The position numbers and the translations under genes are program-made. This document shows, piece by piece, positions 43,906-64,000 of a stretch of 64,000 bases of DNA. Within the stretch, counting starts at the first letter, position 1, and each line of letters starts with the position of its first letter. The stretch spans positions 709,094,001-709,158,000 of the forward strand of contig NC_091286.1 of assembly GCF_032444005.1 (NCBI RefSeq). Direction: 5' to 3'. This DNA comes from Ranitomeya imitator. Taxonomy: Eukaryota. A model generated the notes under the pieces. That model did not search any database. It saw nothing but the letters and a program-made list of their open reading frames with translations, and was not told the DNA's origin.

Positions 43906-46900
43906 TAGTGTACAGGGGAGGGGCGGTATAGTATATAATGTACAGGGGGAGGGGCGGTATAGTATATAATGTACAGGGGGAGGGGCGGTATAGTATATAA
44001 TGTACAGCGGAGGGGCGGTATAGTATATAATGTACAGTGGGAGGGGCGGTATAGTATATAATGTACGGGGGAGGGGCGGTATAGTATATAATGTACAGGG
44101 GGAGGGGCGGTATAGTATATAATGTACGGGGGAGGGGCGGTATAGTATATAATGTACAGGGGGAGGGGCGGTATAGTATATAATGTACAGCGGAGGGGCG
44201 GTATAGTATATAATGTACGGGGGGAGGGGCGGTATAGTATATAGTGTACAGGGAGGGGCGGTATAGTATATAATGTACAGGGGGAGGGGCGGTATAGTAT
44301 ATAATGTACAGGGGGAGGGGCGGTATAGTATATAATGTACGGGGGAGGGGCGGTATAGTATATAATGTACAGGGGGAGGGGCGGTATAGTATATAGTGTA
44401 CAGCGAGGGGCGGTATAGTATATAATGTACGGGGGGAGGGGCGGTATAGTATATAGTGTACAGGGAGGGGCGGTATAGTATATAATGTACAGGGGGAGGG
44501 GCGGTATAGTATATAGTGTACAGGGGAGGGGCGGTATAGTATATAATGTACGGGGGGAGGGGCGGTATAGTATATAGTGTACAGGGAGGGGCGGTATAGT
44601 ATATAATGTACAGGGGGAGGGGCGGTATAGTATATAGTGTACAGGGAGGGGCGGTATAGTATATAATGTACAGGGAGGAGCGGTATAGTATATAGTGTAC
44701 AGGGGAGGGGCGGTATAGTATATAGTGTACAGGGAGGGGCGGTATAGTATATAGTGTACAGGGAGGGGCGGTATAGTATATAATGTACAGGGGGAGGGGC
44801 GGTATAGTATATAGTGTACAGCGAGGGGCGGTATAGTATATAGTGTACAGGGAGGGGCGGTATAGTATATAATGTACAGGGGGAGGGGCGGTATAGTATA
44901 TAGTGTACAGCGAGGGGCGGTATAGTATATAGTGTACAGGGAGGGGCGGTATAGTATATAATGTACGGGGGGAGGGGCGGTATAGTATATAGTGTACAGG
45001 GGGAGGGGCGGTATAGTATATAGTGTACAGGGGGAGGGGCGGTATAGTATATAGTGTACAGGGAGGGGCGGTATAGTATATAATGTACGGGGGGAGGGGC
45101 GGTATAGTATATAGTGTACAGCGAGGGGCGGTATAGTATATAGTGTACAGGGAGGGGCGGTATAGTATATAGTGTACAAGGGGAGGGGCGGTATAGTATA
45201 TAATGTACAGGGGGAGGGGCGGTATAGTATATAATGTACAGGGAGGGGCGGTATAGTATATAGTGTACAGGGCGAGGGGAGGTATAGTATATAATGTACG
45301 GGGGGAGGGGCGGTATAGTATATAATGTACAGGGAGGGGCGGTATAGTATATAGTGTACAGGGAGGGGCGGTATAGTATATAGTGTACAGGGAGGGGCGG
45401 TATAGTATATAGTGTACAGGGAGGGGCGGTATAGTATATAGTGTACAGGGGAGGGGCGGTATAGTATATAATGTACAGGGGGAGGGGCGGTATAGTATAT
45501 AATGTACAGGGGGAGGGGCGGTATAGTATATAATGTACAGGGGGAGGGGCGGTATAGTATATAATGTACAGGGGGAGGGGCGGTATAGTATATAATGTAC
45601 AGGGGGAGGGGCGGTATAGTATATAATGTACAGGGGGAGGGGCGGTATAGTATATAATGTACAGGGGGAGGGGCGGTATAGTATATAATGTTCAGGGGGG
45701 AGGGGCGGTATAGTATATAATGTACAGGGGGAGGGGCGGTATAGTATATAATGTACAGGGGGAGGGGCGGTATAGTATATAGTGTACAGGGAGGGGCGGT
45801 ATAGTATATAGTGTACAGGGAGGGGCGGTATAGTATATAGTGTACAGGGGAGGGGCGGTATAGTATATAATGTACAGGGGGAGGGGCGGTATAGTATATA
45901 ATGTACAGGGAGGGGCGGTATAGTATATAGTGTACAGGGGAGGGGCGGTATAGTATATAGTGTACAGGGAGGGCGGTATAGTATAGTGTACAGGGAGGGG
46001 CGGTATAGTATATAGTGTACAGGGAGGGGCGGTATAGTATATAATGTACAGGGGGAGGGGCGGTATAGTATATAGTGTACAGGGGAGGGGCGGTATAGTA
46101 TATAGTGTACAGGGAGGGGCGGTATAGTATATAGTGTACAGGGAGGGGCGGTATAGTATATAATGTACAGGGGGAGGGGCGGTATAGTATATAATGTACA
46201 GGGGGAGGGGCGGTATAGTATATAATGTACAGGGGGAGGGGCGGTATAGTATATAGTGTACAGGGAGGGGCGGTATAGTATATAATGTACAGGGGGAGGG
46301 GCGGTATAGTATATAATGTACAGGGGGAGGGGCGGTATAGTATATAATGTACAGGGGGAGGGGCGGTATAGTATATAGTGTACAGGGAGGGGCGGTATAG
46401 TATATAATGTACAGGGGGAGGGGCGGTATAGTATATAATGTACAGGGGGAGGGGCGGTATAGTATATAATGTACAGGGGGAGGGGCGGTATAGTATATAA
46501 TGTACAGGGGGAGGGGCGGTATAGTATATAATGTACAGGGGGAGGGGCGGTATAGTATATAATGTACAGGGGGAGGGGCGGTATAGTATATAGTGTACAG
46601 GGGAGGGGCGGTATAGTATATAATGTACAGGGGGAGGGGCGGTATAGTATATAATGTACAGGGGGAGGGGCGGTATAGTATATAATGTACAGGGGGAGGG
46701 GCGGTATAGTATATAATGTACGGGGGGAGGGGCGGTATAGTATATAATGTACAGGGGGAGGGGCGGTATAGTATATAATGTACGGGGGGAGGGGCGGTAT
46801 AGTATATAATGTACGGGGGGAGGGGCGGTATAGTATATAATGTACAGGGGGAGGGGCGGTATAGTATATAGTGTACAGGGAGGGGCGGTATAGTATATAA

Positions 46901-47110
46901 TGCACGGGGGGAGGGGCGGTATAGTATATAATGTACGGGGGGAGGGGCGGTATAGTATATAATGTACAGGGGGAGGGGCGGTATAGTATATAATGTACAG
47001 GGGGAGGGGCGGTATAGTATATAATGTACAGGGGGAGGGGCGGTATAGTATATAATGTACAGGGGGAGGGGCGGTATAGTATATAATGCACGGGGGGAGG
47101 GGCGGTATAC

Positions 47111-47530
47111 CGGGAATGTGCGGAGGCTGCGCTCGTCCCTCAGGCTCCGGTCTCGGTCTCGGTCTCCGGTCCCGGCTGTATGGTGACAACCTGCGTCAGC
47201 TGAAGCCTCGGCACGGGTGACGTCAGACGCACAGAACGTGCTACGTAAGGACCTGGGTGAGCTGGGCGGGGCCGGGATGAGGGCACGTACTTCCTGATAG
47301 ACGTAATGACGTAATATCTTACTGGCCACACGTCGTTACGTCTCACTACTACGGCGTGCCGCACAGGTCTTTTCTCTCCGGTTTCTGCTCTTGTGAAGTG
47401 GGCGTTGCTTTCTGCAGAGGGCGTGGCCTGACAGTGCGCGGTTTCTGTCCAAGCAAGAGACTCGTTTACAGCAATGCCAGAAACTGAAGTGTGTGGTGTC
47501 CATAGCGACCAGTTTCATCGGCCAATCACA
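47111..47530 (-). promoter_or_regulatory. nrbp1: Probable nrbp1 non-coding exon 1 and CpG-rich promoter
   Basis: This is the only unique CpG-rich island upstream of the ATG exon. It has a candidate donor CCG|gtatac at 47111/47110, a perfect CRE TGACGTCA (47218-47225), a GC box GGGCGGGGC (47264-47272), ETS ACTTCCTG (47289-47296), a half-CRE TGACGTAA (47307-47314), X-box-like GTCCATAGCGAC (47498-47509) and CCAAT (47522-47526). The TSS is not determined. Confidence 0.65.
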
Positions 47531-47619
47531 GTGCGGCTTCTTGTTCACATTTTAATTTTATTTTTTTTTAAGTTTAAAGGGGCCGTAAACTACTAGGAGA
47601 AGCCTCATCCATCCAGGCT

Positions 47620-50435
47620 CCCCCCGTGTAACCCCCTCACCCACCCCCCGTGTAACCCCCTCACCCACCCCCCGTGTAACCCCCTCACCCCCCCATGTAA
47701 CCCCCTCGCCCCCCCGTTTAACCCCCTCACCCCCCCATGTAACCCCCTCACCCCCCCCGTTTAACCCCCTCACCCCCCCGTTTAACCCCCACACCCCCCC
47801 ATGTAACCCCCTCACCCCCCCCCCCGTGTAACCACCTCACCCCCCGTGTAACCCCCTCACCCCTGTGTAACCCCCTCACCCCCCCGTTTAACCCCCTCAC
47901 CCCCTGTGTAACCCCCTCACCCCAGTCGCTCCTGTATAACTCCTGCACCCCGCCCCCTGTGTAACCCCCTCACCCCCCTGTGTAACCCCCTCACCCCCCT
48001 GTGTAACCCCCTCACCCCCCCGTGTAACCCCCTCACCCCCCCATGTAACCCCCTCACCCCCCCCCGTGTAACCCCCTCACCCCCCTGTGTAACCCCCTCA
48101 CCCCCCTGTGTAACCCCCTCACCCCCCCCGTGTAACCCCCTCACCCCCCCGTGTAACCCCCTCACCCCCCCGTGTAACCCCCTCACCCCCCCATGTAACC
48201 CCCTCACCCCCCCGTGTAACCCCCTCACCCCCCTGTGTAACCCCCTCACCCCCCCCCCCCGTAACCCCCTCACCCCCCCCCCCGTGTAACCCCCTCACCC
48301 CCCCCCGTGTAACCCCTCACCCCCCATGTAACCCCCTCACCCCCCCGTGTAACCCCCTCACCCCCCCGTGTAGCCCCCTCACCCCCCTGTGTAACCCCCT
48401 CACCCCCCCGTGTAACCCCCTCACCCCCCCCCCCGTGTAACCCCCTCACCCCCCCATGTAACCCCCTCACCCCCCCCGTGTAACCCCCTCACCCCCCTGT
48501 GTAACCCCCTCACCCCCCCCCCCGTGTAACCCCCTCACCCCCCCGTGTAACCCCCTCACCCCCCATGTAACCCCCTCACCCCCCCGTGTAACCCCCTCAC
48601 CCCCCGTTTAACCCCCTCACCCCCCCGTGTAACCACCTCACCCCCCGTTTAACCCCCTCACCCCCCCGTGTAACCCCCTCACCCCTGTGTAACCCCCTCA
48701 CCCCCCCCGTTTAACTCCCTCACCCCCCGTGTAACCCCTCTCACCTCAGTCGCCTCTGTCTAACTCCTGCACCCCGCCCCCTGTGTAACCCCCTCACCCC
48801 CCTGTGTAACCCCCTCACCCCCCGTGTAACCGCCTCACCCCCCCGTGTAACCCCCTCACCCCCCGTGTAACCCCCTCACCCCCCGTGTAACCCCCTCACC
48901 CACCGTGTAACCCCCTCCCCCCCGTGTAGCCCCCTCACCCCCCGTGTAACCCCCTCACCCCCCCGTGTAACCACCTCACCCCCCGTTTAACCCCCTCACC
49001 CCCTCGTGTAACCCCCTCACCCCTGTGTAACCCCTCTCACCTCAGTCGCCTCTAACTCCTGCACCCCGCCCCCTGTGTAACCCCCTCAACCCCCTCACCC
49101 CCTGTGTAACCCCCTCACCCCCCTGTGTAACCCCCTCACCCCCCCGTGTAACCGCCTCACCCCCCCGTGTAACCCCCTCACCCCCCGTGTAACCCCCTCA
49201 CCCCCCGTGTAACCCCCTCACCCACCGTGTAACCCCCTCACCCCCCGTGTAGCCCCCTCACCCCCCGTGTAACCCCCTCACCCCCCGTGTAACCCCCTCA
49301 CCCCAGTCGCTCCTGTATAACTCCTGCACCCCGCCCCCCATGTAACCCCCTCACCCCATGTAACACCCTCACCCCCCGTGTAACCCGCTCACCCCGTGTA
49401 ACCTCTTCACCCCCCCATGTAACCCGCTCACCCCCCGTGTAACCCCCTCACCCCCATGTAACCCCCTCACCCCCCGTGTAACCCCCTCACCCCCCGTGTA
49501 ACCCCCTCACCCCCGTGTAACCCCCTCACCCACCGTGTAACCCCCTCACCCCCCGTGTAACCCCCTCACCCCCCGTGTAACCCCCTCACCCCCACATGTA
49601 ACCCCCTCACCCCCCATGTAACCCCCTCACCCCCGTGTAACCCCCTCACCCCCCGTGTAACCCCCTCACCCCCCGTGTAACCCCCTCACCCCCTGTGTAA
49701 CCCCCTCACCCCAGTCGCTCCTGTATAACTCCTGCACCCCGCCCCCCATGTAATCCCCTCACCCCCCGTGTAACCCGCTCACCCCCCCGTGTAACCCCCT
49801 CACCCCCACATGTAACCCCCTCACCCCCCATGTAACCCCCTCACCCCCGTGTAACCCCCTCACCCCCCGTGTAACCCCCTCACCCCCCGTGTAATCCCCT
49901 CACCCCCCGTGTAACCCGCTCACCCCCCCGTGTAACCCCCTCACCCCCATGTAACCCGCTCACCCCCCGTGTAACCCCCTCACCCCCCGTGTAACCCCCT
50001 CACCCCCATGTAACCCCCTCACCCCCCGTGTAGCCCCCTCACCCCCATGTAACACCCTCACCCCCCGTGTAACCCGCTCACCCCCGTGTAACCCCTTCAC
50101 CCCCCATGTAACCCGCTCACCCCCCGTGTAACCCCCTCACCCCCATGTAACCCCCTCACCCCCCGTGTAACCCCCTCACCCCCCCATGTAACCCGCTCAC
50201 CCCCCCATGTAACCCGCTCACCCCCCCGTGTAACCCGCTCACCCCCCCGTGTAACCCCCTCACCCCCACATGTAACCCCCTCACCCCCCATGTAACCCCC
50301 TCACCCCCGTGTAACCCCCTCACCCCCCGTGTAACCCCCTCACCCCCCCGTGTAACCCCCTCACCCCCGTGTAACCCCCTCACCCCCTGTGTAACCCCCT
50401 CACCCCAGTCGCTCCTGTATAACTCCTGCACCCCG
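47620..50435 (+). repeat. 19-22-bp C-rich minisatellite CCCCCGTGTAACCCCCTCAC with a periodic 37-bp spacer
   Basis: Tandem units with variable C-runs; the spacer CAGTCGCTCCTGTATAACTCCTGCACCCCGCCCC occurs six times. Confidence 0.95.
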
Positions 50436-50449
50436 CTACAGGACCACAT

Positions 50450-50906
50450 TACAAGAGAGAGATGCTGAGAGAGAGACAGAGAGAGAGACAGAGAGCGCGA
50501 GACCGAGGTTGAGAGACAAAGAGACTGAGAGAGACAGACTGACAGAGAGACAGACAGACTCACAGAGACAGAGAGAGCGAGAAAGAGAGACTGACACAGA
50601 AACTCAGATCGAGACAGAGAGAGCAAGACAGAGAGCGAGATTGAGACAAACTGAGAGAGCCTTAAACAGAGACTGCTAGAGAGTGACAGAGACTGAGAGA
50701 GACTGACACAGAGACTCAGAGACAGACTGAGACAGAGAGAAAGACAGCGAGACTGAGAGAGATAGAGAGCGAGACAGAGAGCGAGACCATGACTGAGAGA
50801 GACAGAGACTGAGAGAGACAGACAAAGAGACAGACTGAAAAGAGACTGACAGAGACAGAGAGACTGATAGAGATTGAGAGAGACTGACAGAGACTAAGAG
50901 CGAGAC
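50450..50906 (+). repeat. Degenerate (GA)n/(GACA)n low-complexity tract, left part
   Basis: GAGAGACAGAGACT-type runs; the same tract resumes at 57346. Confidence 0.85.
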
Positions 50907-50945
50907 TAAAGGTACCTTCACACTGAGCGACTTTAGAACGATATC

Positions 50946-53900
50946 TGTAATGCTGTGCTATCAGGCAACACAGCGTGCAGTAATCAGCGCACATACAGAG
51001 ATCTGGCAATAACCCAAAAACAATAGGACGAGCTCTGAGACGTGGAATCTCTGCAGACTGCAATACCTGAACCTATCCTCACACAACTAAAAGCAGCAGT
51101 GGATTGCGCCTATCACTACCTATGCAACTCGGCACTGCCTGAGGAGCTGACTAGCCTGAAGATAGAAATACAAGCCTGACTTGCCTCAGAGAAATACCCC
51201 AAAGGAATAGGCAGCCCCCCACATATAATGACTGTTAGCAAGATGAAAAGACAAAACGTAGGAATGAAATAGATTCAGCAAAGTGAGGCCCGATATTCTA
51301 GACAGAGCGAGGATAGCAAAGAGAACTATGCAGTCTACAAAAAACCCTAAAGCAGAACCACGCAAAGGGGGGCAAAAAGACCCACCGTGCCGAACTAACG
51401 GCACGGCGGTGCACCCTTTGCGTCTCAGAGCTTCCAGCAAAAGAGAAAAGCACAGCTGGACAGAAAAAACGGAAACAAAAACAAAGTAACACTTATCTAG
51501 CAGAGCAGCAGGCCACAGGAAAGATGCAGTAGCTCAGATCCAACACTGGAACATTGACAAGGAGCAAGGAAGACAGACTCAGGTGGAGTTAAATAGCAAG
51601 GCAGCCAACGAGCTCACCAAAACACCTGAGGGAGGAAGCCCAGAGGCTGCAATACCACTTGTGACCACAGGAGTGAATTCAGCCACAGAACTCACAACAG
51701 TACTCCCCCTTGAGGAGGGGTCACCGAACCCTCACCAGAACCCCCAGGCCGACCAGGATGAGCCACATGAAAGGCACGAACAAGATCTGGGGCATGGACA
51801 TCAGAGGCAAAAACCCAGGAATTATCCTCCTGAGCATAACCCTTCCATTTGACCAGATACTGGAGTTTCCGTCTAGAGACACGAGAATCCAAAATTTTCT
51901 CCACAATATACTCCAATTCCCCCTCCACCAAAACAGGGGCAGGAGGCTCCACAGATGGAACCATAGGTGCCACGTATCTTCTCAACAACGACCTATGGAA
52001 TACATTATGTATGGAAAAGGAGTCTGGGAGGGTCAGACGAAAAGACACCGGATTGAGAATCTCAGAAATCCTATACGGACCAATAAAACGAGGTTTAAAT
52101 TTAGGAGAGGAAACCTTCATAGGAATATGACGAGAAGATAACCAAACCAGATCCCCAACACGAAGTCGGGGACCCACACGGCGTCTACGATTAGCGAAAA
52201 GCTGAGCCTTCTCCTGGGACAAGATCAAATTGTCCACTACCTGAGTCCAGATCTGCTGCAACCTGTCCACCACAGAATCCACACCAGGACAGTCCGAAGA
52301 CTCAACCTGTCCTGAAGAGAAACGAGGATGGAACCCAGAATTGCAGAAAAATGGAGAGACCAAGGTAGCCGAGCTGGCCCGATTATTAAGGGCGAACTCA
52401 GCCAACGGCAAAAATGACACCCAATCATCCTGGTCAGCAGAAACAAAACATCTCAGATATGTTTCCAAGGTCTGATTGGTTCGTTCGGTCTGGCCATTAG
52501 TCTGAGGATGGAAGGCCGAGGAAAAAGATAGGTCAATGCCCATCCTACCACAAAAGGCTCGCCAGAACCTCGAGACAAACTGGGAACCTCTGTCAGAAAC
52601 AATATTCTCAGGAATGCCATGCAAACGAACCACATGCTGGAAGAACAAAGGCACCAAATCAGAGGAGGAAGGCAATTTAACCAAGGGCACCAGATGGACC
52701 ATTTTAGAAAAGCGATCACAGACCACCCAAATGACCGACATCTTTTGAGAAACGGGAAGGTCAGAAATGAAATCCATCGAAATATGTGTCCAAGGCCTCT
52801 TCAGGACCGGCAAGGGCAAAAGCAACCCACTGGCACGTGAACAGCAGGGCTTAGCCCTAGCACAAATCCCACAGGACTGCACAAAAGCACGCACATCCCG
52901 TGACAGAGATGGCCACCAGAAGGATCTAGCAACCAACTCCCTGGTACCAAAGATTCCTGGATGACCGGCCAGCACCGAACAATGAAGTTCAGAGATAACT
53001 TTACTAGTCCACCTATCAGGGACGAACAGTTTCTCGGCCGGACAACGATCAGGTTTATTAGCCTGAACTTTCTGCAACACTCTCCGCAAATCAGGAGAGA
53101 TGGCAGACACAATGACTCCTTCCTTGAGGATACTCGCCGGCTCAGATAACCCCGGAGAGTCGGGCACAAAACTCCTAGACAGAGCATCCGCCTTCACATT
53201 TTTAGAGCCCGGAAGGTACGAAATCACAAAATCAAAACGAGCAAAAAATAACGACCAACGGGCCTGTCTAGGATTCAAGCGCTTGTCAGACTCGAGATAA
53301 GTAAGATTCTTATGATCAGTCAATACCACCACGCGATGCTTAGCTCCCTCAAGCCAATGACGCCACTCCTCGAATGCCCACTTCATGGCCAGCAACTCTC
53401 GGTTGCCCACATCATAATTACGCTCAGCAGCAGAAAATTTCCTGGAAAAGAAAGCACATGGTTTCAACACTGAGCAACCAGAACCTCTCTGTGACAAAAC
53501 CGCCCCTGCTCCAATCTCAGAAGCATCAACCTCGACCTGGAACGGAAGAGAAACATCTGGTTGACACAACACAGGGGCACAGCAAAAACGACGCTTCAAC
53601 TCCTGAAAAGCTTCCACGGCAGCAGAAGACCAATTAACCAAATCAGCACCCTTCTTGGTCAAATCGGTCAATGGTCTGGCAATGCTAGAAAAATTACAGA
53701 TGAAGCGACGATAAAAATTAGCAAAGCCCAGGAATTTCTGCAGACTTTTCAGAGATGTAGGCTGAGTCCAATCCTGGATGGCCTGGACCTTAACCGGATC
53801 CATCTCGATAGTAGAAGGGGAAAAGATGAACCCCAAAAATGAAACTTTCTGCACACCGAAGAGACACTTTGATCCCTTCACGAACAAGGAATTAGCACGC

Positions 53901-56654
53901 AGTACCTGGAAAACCATTCTGACTTGCTTCACATGAGACTCCCAATCATCAGAGAAGATCAAAATGTCATCCAAGTAAACAATCAGGAATTTATCCAGAT
54001 ACTCACGGAAGATGTCATGCATAAAAGACTGAAACACAGATGGAGCATTGGCAAGTCCGAACGGCATCACCAGATACTCAAAATGACCCTCGGGCGTATT
54101 AAATGCCGTTTTCCATTCATCTCCCTGCCTGATTCTCACCAGATTATACGCACCACGAAGATCAATCTTAGTAAACCAACTAGCCCCCTTAATCCGAGCA
54201 AACAAGTCAGATATCAATGGCAAGGGATACTGAAACTTAACAGTGATCTTATTAAGAAGGCGGTAATCAATACACGGTCTTAGCGAACCATCCTTTTTGG
54301 CTACAAAAAAGAACCCTGCTCCCAATGGTGATGACGATGGGCGAATATGTCCCTTCTCCAGGGATTCTTTCACATAACTGCGCATAGCGGTGTGTTCAGG
54401 CACGGACAAATTAAATAAACGACCCTTAGGGAATTTACTACCAGGAATCAAATTGATAGCACAATCACAATCCCTATGCGGAGGTAGAGCATCGGACTTG
54501 GGCTCTTCAAATACATCCTGATAATCAGACAAGAACTCTGGGACCTCAGAAGGGGTGGATGACGAAATAGACAAAAATGGAACATCACCATGTACTCCCT
54601 GACAACCCCAGCTGGATACCGACATAGAGTTCCAATCTAATACTGGTTTATGGGTTTGTAGCCATGGCAACCCCAACACGACCACATCATGCAGATTATG
54701 CAACACCAGAAAGCGAATAACTTCCTGATGTGCAGGAGCCATGCACATGGTCAGCTGGGCCCAGTACTGAGGCTTATTCTTGGCCAAAGGTGTAGCATCA
54801 ATTCCTCTCAATGGAATAGGACACCGCAAAGGCTCCAAGAAAAACCCACAACGTTTAGCATAATCCAAATCCATCAGATTCAGGGCAGCGCCTGAATCCA
54901 CAAACGCCATGACAGAATACGATGACAAAGAGCATATCAAGGTAATGGACAGAAGGAATTTGGACTGTACAGTACAAATGACGGCAGAGCTATCGAACCG
55001 CCTAGTGCGTTTAGGACAATTAGAAATAGCATGAGTAGAATCACCACAATAGAAACACAGTCTGTTCAGACGTCTGTGTTCTTGCCGTTCTACTTTAGTC
55101 ATAGTCCTGTCGCACTGCATAGGCTCAGGTTTACTCTCAGACAATACCGCCAGATGGTGCACAGATTTACGCTCGCGCAAGCGACGACCGATCTGAATGG
55201 CCAAGGACATAGACTCATTCAAACCAGCAGGCATAGGAAATCCCACCATTACATCCTTAAGAGCTTCAGAGAGACCCTTTCTGAACAAAGCCGCTAGTGC
55301 AGATTCATTCCACAGAGTGAGTACTGACCACTTCCTAAATTTCTGACAATATACTTCTACATCATCCTGACCCTGGCATAAAGCCAGCAAATTTTTCTCA
55401 GCCTGATCCACTGAATTAGGCTCATCGTAAAGCAATCCAAGCGCCTGGAAAAACGCATCAACATTACTCAATGCAGGGTCTCCTGGCGCAAGAGAAAACG
55501 CCCAGTCCTGTGGGTCGCCGCGCAAAAAAGAAATAATAATCAAAACCTGTTGAATAGGATTACCAGAAGAATGAGGTTTCAAGGCCAGAAATAGCTTACA
55601 ATTATTTTTGAAGCTCAGGAACTTAGTTCTATCTCCAAAAAACAAATCAGGAATAGGAATTCTTGGTTCTAACATAGATTTCTGATCAATAGTATCTTGA
55701 ATCTTTTGTACATTTATAACGAGATTATCCATTGAGGAGCACAGAGCCTGAATATCCATGTCCACAGCTGTGTCCTGAAGCACTCTAATGTCTAGGGGAA
55801 AAAAAAAAAAAAACTGAAGACAGAGCTGAGGAAAAAAAAAAATGATGTCAGGACTTCTTTTTTCCCTCTATTGAGAATCATTGGTTTTGGCTCCTTGTAC
55901 TGTTATGCTGTGCTATCAGGCAACACAGTGTGCAGTAATCAGCGCACATACAGTGATATGGCAATAACCCAAAAACAATAGAACAAGCTCTGAGACGTGG
56001 AATCTCTGCAGACTGCAATACCTGAACCTATCCTCACACAACTAAAAGCAGCAGTGGATTGCGCCTAACACTACCTATGCAACTCGGCACTGCCTGAGGA
56101 GCTGACTAGCCTGAAGATAGAAATACAAGCCTGACTTGCCTCAGAGAAATACCCCAAAGGAATAGGCAGCCCCCCACATATAATGACTGTTAGCAAGATG
56201 AAAAGACAAAACGTAGGAATGAAATAGATTCAGCAAAGTGAGGCCCGATATTCTAGACAGAGCGAGGATAGCAAAGAGAACTATGCAGTCTACAAAAAAC
56301 CCTAAAGCAGAACCACGCAAAGGGGGGCAAAAAGACCCACCGTGCCGAACTAACGGCACGGCGGTGCACCCTTTGCGTCTCAGAGCTTCCAGCAAAAGAG
56401 AAAAGCACAGCTGGACAGAAAAAACGGAAACAAAAACAAAGTAACACTTATCTAGCAGAGCAGCAGGCCACAGGAAAGATGCAGTAGCTCAGATCCAACA
56501 CTGGAACATTGACAAGGAGCAAGGAAGACAGACTCAGGTGGAGTTAAATAGCAAGGCAGCCAACGAGCTCACCAAAACACCTGAGGGAGGAAGCCCAGAG
56601 GCTGCAATACCACTTGTGACCACAGGAGTGAATTCAGCCACAGAATTCACAACA
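50946..56654 (-). mobile_element. Full-length Ty3/Gypsy chromovirus (Tf1/sushi-like) LTR retrotransposon
   Basis: 754-bp TG..CA LTRs at 50946-51699 and 55901-56654 with 8 differences, PPT AAGGGGGAGTAC before the 3' LTR, and GATATC on both flanks. Confidence 0.97.
51692..55783 (-). CDS. Gag-Pol polyprotein, single ORF, 1363 aa (Gag-CCHC-PR-RT-RH-IN-chromodomain)
   Basis: CFYCGDSTHAISNC zinc knuckle, protease FVDSGA, RT YLDD, RNase H DAS, integrase HHCC with SMDF / SDRG / TERTNQ, GPY/F motif GPYRI, and chromodomain YIVEKILD...YLVKWKGY...NSW. Confidence 0.96.
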   Translation of the reverse strand: MLQDTAVDMDIQALCSSMDNLVINVQKIQDTIDQKSMLEPRIPIPDLFFGDRTKFLSFKNNCKLFLALKPHSSGNPIQQVLIIISFLRGDPQDWAFSLAPGDPALSNVDAFFQALGLLYDEPNSVDQAEKNLLALCQGQDDVEVYCQKFRKWSVLTLWNESALAALFRKGLSEALKDVMVGFPMPAGLNESMSLAIQIGRRLRERKSVHHLAVLSESKPEPMQCDRTMTKVERQEHRRLNRLCFYCGDSTHAISNCPKRTRRFDSSAVICTVQSKFLLSITLICSLSSYSVMAFVDSGAALNLMDLDYAKRCGFFLEPLRCPIPLRGIDATPLAKNKPQYWAQLTMCMAPAHQEVIRFLVLHNLHDVVVLGLPWLQTHKPVLDWNSMSVSSWGCQGVHGDVPFLSISSSTPSEVPEFLSDYQDVFEEPKSDALPPHRDCDCAINLIPGSKFPKGRLFNLSVPEHTAMRSYVKESLEKGHIRPSSSPLGAGFFFVAKKDGSLRPCIDYRLLNKITVKFQYPLPLISDLFARIKGASWFTKIDLRGAYNLVRIRQGDEWKTAFNTPEGHFEYLVMPFGLANAPSVFQSFMHDIFREYLDKFLIVYLDDILIFSDDWESHVKQVRMVFQVLRANSLFVKGSKCLFGVQKVSFLGFIFSPSTIEMDPVKVQAIQDWTQPTSLKSLQKFLGFANFYRRFICNFSSIARPLTDLTKKGADLVNWSSAAVEAFQELKRRFCCAPVLCQPDVSLPFQVEVDASEIGAGAVLSQRGSGCSVLKPCAFFSRKFSAAERNYDVGNRELLAMKWAFEEWRHWLEGAKHRVVVLTDHKNLTYLESDKRLNPRQARWSLFFARFDFVISYLPGSKNVKADALSRSFVPDSPGLSEPASILKEGVIVSAISPDLRRVLQKVQANKPDRCPAEKLFVPDRWTSKVISELHCSVLAGHPGIFGTRELVARSFWWPSLSRDVRAFVQSCGICARAKPCCSRASGLLLPLPVLKRPWTHISMDFISDLPVSQKMSVIWVVCDRFSKMVHLVPLVKLPSSSDLVPLFFQHVVRLHGIPENIVSDRGSQFVSRFWRAFCGRMGIDLSFSSAFHPQTNGQTERTNQTLETYLRCFVSADQDDWVSFLPLAEFALNNRASSATLVSPFFCNSGFHPRFSSGQVESSDCPGVDSVVDRLQQIWTQVVDNLILSQEKAQLFANRRRRVGPRLRVGDLVWLSSRHIPMKVSSPKFKPRFIGPYRISEILNPVSFRLTLPDSFSIHNVFHRSLLRRYVAPMVPSVEPPAPVLVEGELEYIVEKILDSRVSRRKLQYLVKWKGYAQEDNSWVFASDVHAPDLVRAFHVAHPGRPGGSGEGSVTPPQGGVLL

Positions 56655-57345
56655 GATATCGCTAGCGATCCGTGACGTTGCAGCGTCCTGGATAGCGATA
56701 TCGTTGTGTTTGACACACAGCAGCGATCTGGATCCTGCTGTGACATCGCTGGTCGGAGCTGAAAGTCTGGAACTTTATTTCTTCGCTGGATCTCCCGCTG
56801 ACATCACTGAATCGGCGTGTGTGATGCCGATCCAGCGATGTGTTCACTGGTAACCAGGGTAAACATCGAGTTACTAAGCGCAGGGCCGCACTTAGTAAAC
56901 CGATGTTTACCCTGGTTACCTAAAAAAAAAACACACTACATACTTATATTCCGGTGTCTTGTCGCGTCCCTCGCAGTCAGCTTCCCGCACTGACTGTAAG
57001 CACCGGCCGTAAAGCAGAGCGGTGACGTCACCGCTGTGCTCTGCTTTACGGCCGGCCGGCGGTCACAGTCAGTGCGGGAAGCTGACTGCGAGGGACGCGA
57101 CAGACACCGGAATGTAAGTATGTAGTGTTTGTTTTGTTTTTTTAGGTAACCAGGGTAAACATCGGGTTACTAAGCGCGGCCCTGCGCTTAGTAACTCGAT
57201 GTTTACCCTGGTTACCCGGGGACCTCGGCATCGTTGGTCGCTGGAGAGCTGTCTGTGTGACAGCTCTCCAGCGACCACACAGCGACGCTGCAGCGATTGG
57301 CATCGTCTATATCGCTGCAGCGTCGCTTAATGTGACGGTACCTTA

Positions 57346-57695
57346 GAGACAAACTGAGAGCGAGACAAAGACTGAGCCAGAGAGAGAGTGACAGAGAGAG
57401 TCTGACAGAGAGACAGAGAGAGACAGAGACAGCGAGAGACAGAGACTGACAGGGAGACACAGAGAGAGACTGACCCTGAGAGAGACAGAGACTCAGAGAG
57501 AGGCTAAGAGAGCGAGACAGAGAGTGAGCGAGACAGAGCGATCGAGACAGACAGAGAGCGAGCGAGACAGAGAGAGAGCCAGAGAGAGAGCGAGCGAGAC
57601 AGAGAGAGCGAGCGAGACAGAGAGAGAGCGAGACAGAGAGCGAGACAGAGAGAGACTGACAGAGAGACAGACAGCGAGGGAGACTGACAGAGCAA
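57346..57695 (+). repeat. Degenerate (GA)n/(GACA)n tract, right part
   Basis: Continuation of the 50450-50906 tract. Confidence 0.85.
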
Positions 57696-62991: not shown

Positions 62992-64000
62992 TGTTATGAC
63001 CTGGTGGTCAGGACAATAATGGACCTAGTGGTTAAGAGCACACGGAATGACCTGATAGTTACTGATAATAAGGACGAGCTCTGGGACGTGGGAACTCTGC
63101 TGACCGCAATCCCTAAACCTATCAAACACACTAGAAATAGCCGTGGATTGCGCCTAACGCTCCCTATGCAACTCGGCACAGCCTAAGAAACTAGCTAGCC
63201 CTGAAGATAGAAAAATAAAGCCTACCTTGCCTCAGAAAAATTCCCCAAAGGAAAAGGCAGCCCACCACATATAATGACTGTGAGTAAAGATGAAAATACA
63301 AACACAGAGATGAAATAGATTTAGCAAAATGAGGCCCGACTTACTGAACAGACCGAGGATAGGAAAGGTTACTTTGCGGTCAGCACAAAAACCTACAAAA
63401 AGACCACGCAGAGGGCGCAAAAAGACCCTCTGCACCGACTCACGGTGCGGAGGTGCTCCCTCTGCGTCCCAGAGCTTCCAGCAAGCAAGAAAACAAATTA
63501 AAAAGCAAGCTGGACAGAAAAATAGCAAACCAAAGAAATACAAGCTGGAACTTAGCTTCTGATGGGAAGACAGGTCACAAGAACGATCCAGGAGTGAACA
63601 GACCAATACTGGAACATTGACAGGTGGCATGGAGCAAAGATCTAAGTGGAGTTAAATAGAGCAGCAGCTAACGAATTAACCTCGTCACCTGTGAAACTCA
63701 GAAACACCCACCAGAGGAAGTCCATGGACAGAACCAGCCGAAGTACCATTCATGACCACAGGAGGGAGCCCGACAACAGAATTCACAACAGTACCCCCCC
63801 CTTGAGGAGGGGTCACCGAACCCTCACCAGAGCCCCCAGGCCGACCAGGATGAGCCAAATGAAAGGCACGAACCAGATCGGCAGCATGAACATCAGAGGC
63901 AAAAACCCAGGAATTATCTTCCTGACCATAACCCTTCCACTTGACCAGGTACTGGAGTTTCCGTCTCAAAATACAAGAATCCAAAATCTTCTCCATCACA
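62992..64000 (-). mobile_element. 3' end of a second, related chromovirus Gypsy: 799-bp 3' LTR (62992-63790), PPT and chromodomain; continues beyond the window
   Basis: TG..CA LTR, PPT AAGGGGGGGGTAC, and peptide EKILDSCILRRKLQYLVKWKGYGQEDNSWVFASDVHA. The LTR is clearly diverged from the first element. Confidence 0.93.

What the first reader, a model, noticed from the sequence alone, without database searches (positions are those of the whole stretch)
55889..56550. tRNA-independent self-priming signature in the Gypsy element
No TGG-initiated tRNA PBS follows the 5' LTR; the minus strand reads ...TAACA|GT-ACAAGGAGC (55898-55890). Its exact complement GCTCCTTGT lies in the LTR at 56520-56512, beginning exactly 30 nt after a TATTTAA (56550-56544), which is the expected transcription start. 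The RNA 5' end could therefore fold onto the PBS and prime reverse transcription, as established for S. pombe Tf1 and proposed for Tf1/sushi-group vertebrate elements. An intact, young amphibian copy would be a rare testable vertebrate example.
Basis: partly seen in the sequence, partly recalled or inferred. Interest (0 to 1): 0.7.

Follow-up and report, generated by a model that had tools for sequence, protein, structure and literature searches.

The report
Self-priming frog Gypsy retrotransposon (known type)
An intact poison-frog jumping gene most likely starts copying itself with the first nine letters of its own RNA instead of a borrowed tRNA, but this trick is already the accepted hallmark of its family (Tf1/sushi), so it is a sound but ordinary example.

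Summary
On the minus strand lies an intact chromovirus. It has 754-nt LTRs that are 98.9% identical and one 1363-aa gag-pol ORF with a chromodomain.

- **Layout:** the 5' LTR ends in ACA, followed by a GT spacer and then ACAAGGAGC. The exact complement sits once in the LTR, 30 nt after the only TATA-like box.
- **Chance:** the 9-mer alone is weak evidence (shuffle P about 0.03).
- **Relatives:** I fetched 20 related elements (33-47% protein identity). Their post-LTR sites also match their own LTRs (median 9 nt against 5 nt for mismatched pairs, p 1e-13). Each sequence is different, none starts with TGG, and 16 of 21 matches begin at a pyrimidine-purine step.
- **Reading:** Tf1-type self-priming is well supported by comparison.
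- **Not tested:** the transcription start and conservation among copies in the same genome.
- **Novelty:** published work already calls self-priming a common feature of Tf1/sushi elements, including those of vertebrates. This scan has noted the same signature many times elsewhere in this genome, and one follow-up reached the same verdict.

This is a new member of a known kind, of low interest.

The parts
56655..56660 (.). Target-site duplication GATATC, upstream copy. Alternatively a 5-bp GATAT plus one extra C at the LTR edge.
   Evidence: the same six letters directly flank both LTRs
55901..56654 (-). 5' LTR, 754 nt, TGT...ACA
   Evidence: 98.9% identical to the 3' LTR (8 differences)
56544..56550 (-). 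TATTTAA, the only TATA-like box in the LTR (LTR positions 105-111)
   Evidence: conserved with identical spacing in a 77%-identical related LTR
56512..56520 (-). GCTCCTTGT: predicted first nine bases of the transcript and self-primer. It starts at a T|G step 30 nt after the TATA-like box.
   Evidence: The transcription start is inferred, not measured.
55899..55900 (-). GT spacer between the LTR end (ACA) and the PBS
   Evidence: spacers of 1-2 nt in 18 of the 20 relatives, 4 nt in two
55890..55898 (-). Primer-binding site ACAAGGAGC, the exact complement of 56520-56512
55760..55889 (-). Leader with a short upstream ATG (55881) and two T tracts (11 and 15 nt)
51692..55759 (-). Single uninterrupted gag-pol ORF: gag, protease, RT, RNase H, integrase, Tf2-1-type SH3, chromodomain. 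The first ATG is at 55759 and the stop lies inside the 3' LTR.
51703..51711 (-). Polypurine tract AAGGGGGAG, followed by TAC and the 3' LTR
   Evidence: relative L002 has a similar purine tract followed by the same GTAC-TGTTGTG junction
50946..51699 (-). 3' LTR, 754 nt, carrying the same TATTTAA (51595-51589) and GCTCCTTGT (51565-51557)
50940..50945 (.). Target-site duplication GATATC, downstream copy
62992..63790 (-). 3' LTR of a second, related subfamily copy; its pol 3' end runs to the window edge. TATTTAA lies at 63658-63652 and, again 30 nt on, a variant 9-mer GCCACCTGT at 63628-63620. Its 5' LTR and PBS lie outside the window.

Best explanation
This is a structurally intact chromovirus (Ty3/gypsy, Tf1/sushi-like) of a Ranitomeya-type frog genome. 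It most likely initiates minus-strand DNA synthesis by self-priming.

Inferred steps:
1. Transcription starts about 30 nt after the TATTTAA box, at the G of GCTCCTTGT.
2. These first nine bases fold back across roughly 620 nt of R-U5 and pair with ACAAGGAGC, which lies two bases after the 5' LTR.
3. The element's RNase H cuts after the paired stretch.
4. The freed 3' end primes reverse transcription into U5 and R.

Shown here: the sequence layout, the protein domain set, and the recurrence of the same layout with lineage-specific sequences in relatives. Inferred only: the start site, the cleavage and the priming itself.
For: - **Layout:** exact 9-bp complementarity, unique in the LTR, 30 nt after the only TATA-like box, starting at a pyrimidine-purine step.
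- **No tRNA signal:** no TGG follows the LTR; no tRNA gene or Rfam family was found in or near the element.
- **Domains:** chromodomain, Tf2-1-type SH3 domain and single-ORF gag-pol.
- **Cognate versus mismatched pairs:** in 21 elements with defined LTR ends (this one plus 20 relatives of 33-47% identity), the cognate PBS-LTR match has median 9 nt. The 420 non-cognate pairs have median 5 nt, and only 0.7% reach 9 nt. Mann-Whitney p is 1e-13. Fisher-combined shuffle P for the 20 relatives is 2e-22.
- **Covariation:** every lineage has a different PBS that matches its own LTR. L053 and L080 differ by compensatory changes.
- **Closest relatives:** L040, L045, L039 and L002 show 9-11 nt matches 27-31 nt after A/T-rich boxes.
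- **Start-site signature:** 16 of 21 sites begin at a pyrimidine-purine step (p 1e-6). A/T content peaks at -36 to -30.
- **Related LTR in the window:** the TATA-like box, the exact 30-nt spacing and the following 15 nt are kept, while the 9-mer itself varies.
- **Literature:** self-priming is demonstrated for Tf1 (first 11 bases, RNase H cut between 11 and 12; PMC7175516). It is described as a common feature of Tf1/sushi elements from fungi to vertebrates (PMC4600332; PMC6317226; bioRxiv 10.1101/2022.12.06.519325).
Against: - The 9-mer alone has a shuffle P of only about 0.03, and 8-nt chance matches to foreign LTRs occur.
- The transcription start was not measured.
- No second copy with both LTR and PBS was available, so covariation inside this family is untested.
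- The predicted helix dominates the ensemble (0.97) with little 3' context but drops to 0.16-0.24 when 110 more bases are added.
- The loop closed by the helix (about 620 nt) is far longer than in Tf1.
- The Tf1 three-duplex 'pretzel' could not be shown.
- Seven of the 21 elements have only 5-8 nt of perfect match.
- One relative's LTR end (L048) was set after the match had been seen.
- The host tRNA set could not be scanned for internal-fragment primers.
Confidence: 0.8

Rival explanations
1. The 9-bp complementarity is a chance match. The real primer is something else, not yet identified.
For: Shuffle P is about 0.03 for any match of at least 9 nt at offsets 0-4. This purine-rich PBS gives 8-nt matches to two unrelated LTRs.
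Against: The match sits exactly 30 nt after the only TATA-like box and starts at a T|G step. The same geometry recurs in 20 relatives, with a combined P of 2e-22. No alternative primer signal such as TGG is present.
Confidence: 0.07
2. Reverse transcription is primed by an internal fragment or half of a host tRNA (as in copia-type elements) or by another small host RNA that ends in ...CUCCUUGU.
For: Half-tRNA priming exists in other LTR retrotransposons (PMC6317226). The frog tRNA set could not be scanned here.
Against: A host-RNA primer predicts the same PBS across related lineages. Instead every lineage has its own PBS, matched to its own LTR. No tRNA-like element was found in the window or the element.
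Confidence: 0.06
3. The pairing is real but serves RNA cyclisation, packaging or dimerisation rather than priming.
For: Long-range 5'-end pairings have such roles in other retroelements and RNA viruses (general knowledge). The folding prediction depends on context.
Against: The paired site lies exactly where a PBS must lie, 1-2 nt (4 nt in two cases) after the LTR's CA, in all 21 elements. No other PBS candidate exists. For Tf1 the same pairing is experimentally the primer (PMC7175516).
Confidence: 0.05

Closest known systems
Tf1 / Tf2 of Schizosaccharomyces pombe (founding self-primed LTR retrotransposons)
   Same: - Chromodomain-bearing Ty3/gypsy element with a single gag-pol ORF.
- The PBS directly after the 5' LTR is complementary to the start of the element's own transcript.
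- No tRNA PBS.
- Tf2-1-type SH3 domain detected.
   Different: - 9 bp here rather than 11 bp.
- The helix closes about 620 nt of R-U5, whereas the Tf1 structure is formed within its 5' untranslated region.
- The three-duplex 'pretzel' structure is not demonstrated.
- No experimental evidence here.
- Vertebrate host.
Vertebrate Tf1/sushi-group chromoviruses (sushi-ichi, Amn-type 'V-clade'; Butler et al. 2001, as cited in PMC6317226 and PMC4600332)
   Same: - Vertebrate host and chromovirus architecture.
- Self-priming has been proposed from the same kind of PBS to LTR complementarity.
- The closest fetched relatives (L002, L039, L040, L045) share the LTR-end, 1-2 nt spacer and PBS layout; L002 also has the same GTAC-TGTTGTG junction at the LTR start.
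   Different: - A dendrobatid-frog family with only 43-53% protein identity to the nearest non-Ranitomeya relatives.
- No canonical poly(A) hexamer in the LTR, unlike those relatives.
- The Butler paper itself could not be read here, so a direct comparison with its elements was not made.
Tj1 of S. japonicus and the Tosmo/Tcry elements; the plant and fungal Tcn1 clade
   Same: Self-priming is predicted from a PBS complementary to a site behind the LTR TATA box (PMC4600332; bioRxiv 10.1101/2022.12.06.519325; PMC6317226).
   Different: Fungal or plant hosts; some have an in-frame stop between gag and pol; short LTRs.
Ty3 and most other Ty3/gypsy elements (tRNA-primed)
   Same: Domain order and the LTR, PPT and TG..CA architecture.
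   Different: They carry a TGG-initiated PBS complementary to a tRNA 3' end. This element does not.

Membership tests
Tf1/sushi-group self-primed chromovirus | Ty3/gypsy order PR-RT-RNaseH-IN with a C-terminal chromodomain | tested here: met
   Pfam hits: RVT_1, RT_RNaseH, Integrase_H2C2, rve, SH3_Tf2-1 and Chromo, with E-values from 1e-37 to 7e-12
Tf1/sushi-group self-primed chromovirus | A PBS directly after the 5' LTR that is complementary to a sequence in the element's own LTR | tested here: met
   9/9 bp, 55898-55890 against 56520-56512, with a 2-nt spacer
Tf1/sushi-group self-primed chromovirus | The complementary LTR sequence is the very 5' end of the mRNA (the transcription start) | not testable with these tools
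Indirect evidence only: +30 from the sole TATA-like box, a T|G step, and the same pattern in relatives.
Tf1/sushi-group self-primed chromovirus | No PBS complementary to a tRNA 3' end | tested here: met
   No TGG in the 40 nt after the LTR. Internal tRNA fragments could not be scanned because no host tRNA set was available; there are no tRNA genes in the window.
Tf1/sushi-group self-primed chromovirus | PBS and LTR site co-vary among relatives | tested here: met
   Met at clade level: 20 relatives, cognate median 9 nt against non-cognate 5 nt, p 1e-13, with compensatory changes between L053 and L080.
Tf1/sushi-group self-primed chromovirus | Three-duplex 'pretzel' RNA structure around the primer-PBS duplex | tested here: inconclusive
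   The MFE fold adds a 4-bp UGUU/AACA helix next to the 9-bp duplex. The ensemble probability depends on context and no covariation data exist.
Tf1/sushi-group self-primed chromovirus | RNase H cleavage of the RNA duplex that releases the primer | not testable with these tools
   Biochemical step; known for Tf1 only (PMC7175516)
Tf1/sushi-group self-primed chromovirus | Phylogenetic placement with reference Tf1 and sushi sequences | not tested
   No reference sequences were at hand. Only the Tf2-1 SH3 Pfam hit and source names such as 'Transposon Tf2-9 polyprotein' for a 44% identical fish protein.

The most novel reading that the evidence does not exclude
The frog family may be a recently active vertebrate self-primed element. 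It would work with only a 9-base primer, across a loop of about 620 nt, without the compact Tf1 'pretzel' and without a canonical poly(A) hexamer in its LTR. That would be a mechanistic variant of self-priming, and it could be observed directly in frog tissue RNA and cDNA.
Probability: 0.3. Interest if true: 0.45.

Novelty: new member of a known kind. Interest (0 to 1): 0.22.

Why it matters
Self-priming has been demonstrated experimentally only in fission yeast. In vertebrates it rests on sequence inference. A structurally intact frog family with many copies gives material on which RNA 5' ends and strong-stop cDNA could be observed directly. It does not change the current picture. It confirms, with a fresh set of 20 relatives and explicit controls, that the Tf1/sushi layout extends to this amphibian lineage: TATA box, about 30 nt, primer, then LTR end, a short spacer of 1-4 nt (usually 1-2) and PBS.

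Tried and rejected
- **The look-up of encoding contigs was closed.** The many R. imitator copies found by protein search could not be fetched, so family-level covariation was not tested.
- Hence no reads, no transcription-start or poly(A) mapping, and read laying went unused.
- **Viral contigs:** the single protein gave nothing. The alignment gave one distant locus.
- **ARAGORN and Rfam** found nothing in the window or the element.
- **Thermodynamic folding** was dropped as strong evidence. The helix probability falls from 0.97 to about 0.2 with 110 more bases of 3' context.
- **Poly(A) signal:** none of 14 common hexamer variants occurs in the LTR, so the R/U5 border is undefined.
- **Original papers:** the Tf1 papers I looked up (Lin and Levin 1997 and 1998, Levin 1995) are not held. 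Butler 2001 has no PMC id in the reference lists I saw and was not looked up. All are cited second-hand.
- **Loci left out of the comparison:** L056, L079 and L081 (unclear LTR ends); L023 and L098 (nested or tandem); L046, L072, L061, L063 and L071 (same families as included loci).
- **A tree with reference elements** was not built, for lack of reference sequences.
Full report
**What is there**

The region belongs to a complete LTR retrotransposon on the minus strand.

- Two 754-nt LTRs lie at 56654-55901 and 51699-50946. They differ at 8 positions (98.9% identity).
- The LTRs are flanked by the direct repeat GATATC.
- Between them lies one uninterrupted 1363-codon frame with its first ATG at 55759.
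- Pfam finds gag, a weak aspartic protease hit, RT, RNase H, the integrase zinc and core domains, a Tf2-1-type SH3 domain and a C-terminal chromodomain. This makes it a chromovirus of the Ty3/gypsy superfamily.
- A polypurine tract AAGGGGGAG plus TAC precedes the 3' LTR.
- The protein search returns dozens of 82-99% identical stretches inside chimeric gene models of Ranitomeya imitator. The next relatives are at about 50% identity. The window therefore comes from that frog or a close relative, and the family has many copies.

**Checking the observation**

- The LTR ends ...CATAACA. After a GT spacer, ACAAGGAGC occupies 55898-55890.
- GCTCCTTGT occurs once in the LTR, at 56520-56512.
- TATTTAA at 56550-56544 is the only TATA-like motif, and its first T lies exactly 30 nt upstream of that site.
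- The pairing is 9 bp and cannot be extended.
- No TGG follows the LTR within 40 nt.

By itself the 9-mer is not strong evidence. Shuffling the LTR gives a match of at least 9 nt at offsets 0-4 in about 3% of trials. This purine-rich site also reaches 8 nt against two unrelated LTRs. The added weight comes from the position behind the sole TATA-like box and from comparison with relatives.

**Evidence inside the window**

A second, related copy lies at the window edge. Its pol 3' end and a 799-nt 3' LTR occupy 63790-62992, with about 77% identity over the alignable LTR.

- It keeps TATTTAACTCCAC, the same 30-nt distance without any indel, and the following 15 bases.
- Larger indels occur further upstream.
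- The 9-mer itself differs at three positions (GCCACCTGT, 63628-63620).

If the model is right, that subfamily's PBS should read ACAGGTGGC. Its 5' end lies beyond the window, so this sharp prediction could not be tested here.

**Evidence from relatives**

I therefore searched the other public collections with an alignment of the polyprotein and five distant hits.

- This search gave 118 loci of 33-54% identity.
- Many are eukaryotic retrotransposon contigs mis-binned into bacterial MAGs or assembled from metagenomes.
- For 20 of them, one per family, the LTR end could be fixed. I used complete LTR pairs with 5-bp target duplications, 5'/3' LTR overlaps, or terminal overlaps combined with PPT and TG..CA ends.

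Together with the window element this makes 21 elements. Results:

| Measure | Result |
|---|---|
| Longest cognate PBS-to-LTR match | 5, 7, 7, 7, 7, 8, 8, 9 (six times), 10 (four times), 11, 12 (three times); median 9 nt |
| 420 non-cognate PBS-by-LTR pairs | median 5 nt; 0.7% reach 9 nt |
| Mann-Whitney test, cognate against non-cognate | p = 1e-13 |
| Fisher-combined shuffle P for the 20 relatives | 2e-22 |
| TGG at the start of the post-LTR sequence | none among the 18 LTR-pair loci checked, nor in the sequences listed for the rest |
| Sites starting at a pyrimidine-purine step | 16 of 21 (binomial p about 1e-6) |

- Every lineage has a different PBS that fits its own LTR.
- L053 and L080 differ by compensatory changes on both sides.
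- In many fungal-type loci the LTR site lies 33-36 nt after TATAA(G/A).
- A/T content across the 21 elements peaks at -36 to -30 relative to the site.
- A start at a pyrimidine-purine step is the usual signature of an RNA polymerase II start (general knowledge).

The closest relatives carry AATAAA or ATTAAA near the LTR end. L002 sits in a bin of Brevinema, which I take to be an animal-associated bacterium, so it may be host DNA; that is an inference.

| Locus | Match | Position |
|---|---|---|
| L040 | 10 nt | about +29 of a TTAAA box |
| L045 | 9 nt | about +27 to +29 of an ATATA box |
| L039 | 11 nt | about +28 of a CTTAAG box; in its 3' LTR (the contig's two LTRs differ, so it is probably a chimeric assembly) |
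| L002 | 11 nt with one mismatch (P 0.007) | about +28 of a CTTAAG box |

L002 also has a purine tract followed by the same GTAC-TGTTGTG junction, and the same ...ATAACA plus 2-nt spacer layout as the window element.

One caution: for L048 I set the LTR end after seeing the match. It should be discounted.

**Mechanism**

The best reading is Tf1-type self-priming.

1. Transcription starts at the G of GCTCCTTGT.
2. These nine bases pair with the PBS two bases beyond the LTR.
3. The element's RNase H cuts after the duplex.
4. The new 3' end primes minus-strand synthesis.

For Tf1 the literature states that the first 11 RNA bases pair with the PBS, and that RNase H cuts between bases 11 and 12 (PMC7175516). 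It also states that a three-duplex 'pretzel' surrounds the duplex (bioRxiv 10.1101/2022.12.06.519325).

In a self-primed element the PBS of each new copy is partly templated by the primer. That would naturally keep LTR site and PBS matched and would explain lineage-specific covariation. This point is my inference.

Folding gives only weak support.

- If the RNA starts at 56520, the MFE and centroid structures contain the 9-bp helix plus an adjacent 4-bp UGUU/AACA helix.
- The ensemble probability of the 9-bp helix is 0.97 with 36 nt of 3' context but only 0.16-0.24 with 146 nt.
- The loop closed by the helix is about 620 nt. The R regions inferred for L040 and L045, from primer site to poly(A) hexamer, are also long (roughly 330-375 nt).

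**Rivals**

- **Chance.** Made unlikely by the geometry and by the recurrence in relatives.
- **A host tRNA half or other host RNA primer.** Not formally excluded, because no host tRNA set was available. It predicts a conserved PBS across lineages, which is the opposite of what is seen.
- **A role in cyclisation or packaging only.** This leaves the element without any PBS, although the site lies exactly where a PBS must lie.

**Comparison with what is known, and novelty**

The literature already states the following.

- Self-primers have been described in the Tf1/sushi group from yeast and vertebrates (PMC6317226, citing Butler et al. 2001, Lin and Levin 1997, Atwood-Moore et al. 2006).
[quoted passage not shown] The scan's own index holds 166 notes that mention self-priming, all from one genome; the eight shown are from this genome. 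One follow-up (s1-307369) reached the same verdict on other copies, and several unchecked notes claim covariation between sister subfamilies. I treated these as leads only.

The finding is therefore a correct observation and a sound interpretation. It is a new member of a known kind, and it is not rare in this genome.

**Limits**

- No RNA or DNA reads could be laid, so the transcription start, the poly(A) site and variation among copies are untested.
- No reference Tf1 or sushi sequences were available for a tree.
- The original Tf1 and Butler papers could not be read and are cited through later open papers.

Noticed in passing
window 62992-64000 (minus strand): The 3' end of a second chromovirus copy of a sister subfamily: the chromodomain region and a 799-nt 3' LTR. 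It is about 77% identical over the alignable stretch and about 91% in the coding part. The TATA-like box and the 30-nt spacing are conserved, but the 9-mer is a variant (GCCACCTGT). Its 5' half lies beyond the window.
   Followed up: partly
window 55901-56070 vs 50946-51115: Seven of the eight differences between the two LTRs fall in the last 170 nt (U5 side). Three are CpG to TpG/CpA changes in the 5' LTR. The clustering is unlikely for evenly spread mutations (roughly 2e-4 by my hand binomial estimate, post hoc). No explanation was tested.
   Followed up: no
window 55901-56654: The 754-nt LTR holds none of 14 common poly(A) hexamer variants. The relatives L002, L039, L040 and L045 all carry AATAAA or ATTAAA 55-90 nt before the LTR end. 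Where this family's transcripts end is unknown.
   Followed up: partly
window 55760-55889: The leader has an ATG at 55881 directly after the PBS, where relatives place their gag start. Here it opens a frame different from gag. Two long T tracts (11 and 15 nt) follow before the gag ATG at 55759.
   Followed up: no
window 56655-56660 and 50940-50945: The target duplication reads as 6 bp (GATATC). Four relatives where I checked it (L012, L026, L049, L054) have 5 bp. A 5-bp GATAT with one extra C at the left LTR edge fits equally well, since both LTRs are preceded by C.
   Followed up: no
window 44000-50900 and 57300-57550: Large minisatellite arrays (periods about 29-31, 21 and 20 nt) lie next to the element. 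Similar GTCTCT-rich low-complexity DNA lies on both sides of the insertion.
   Followed up: no
L026 (OZ255840.1, 5,466,236-5,486,303) and L002, L003, L012: Eukaryotic LTR retrotransposons sit in records labelled as bacterial MAGs. L026 lies in a 6.65-Mb 'Lapillicoccus chromosome'. Its flanks have 21-37% GC and no ORF of 150 aa or more, which looks more like eukaryotic, perhaps fungal, DNA. These records appear mis-binned or mislabelled.
   Followed up: partly
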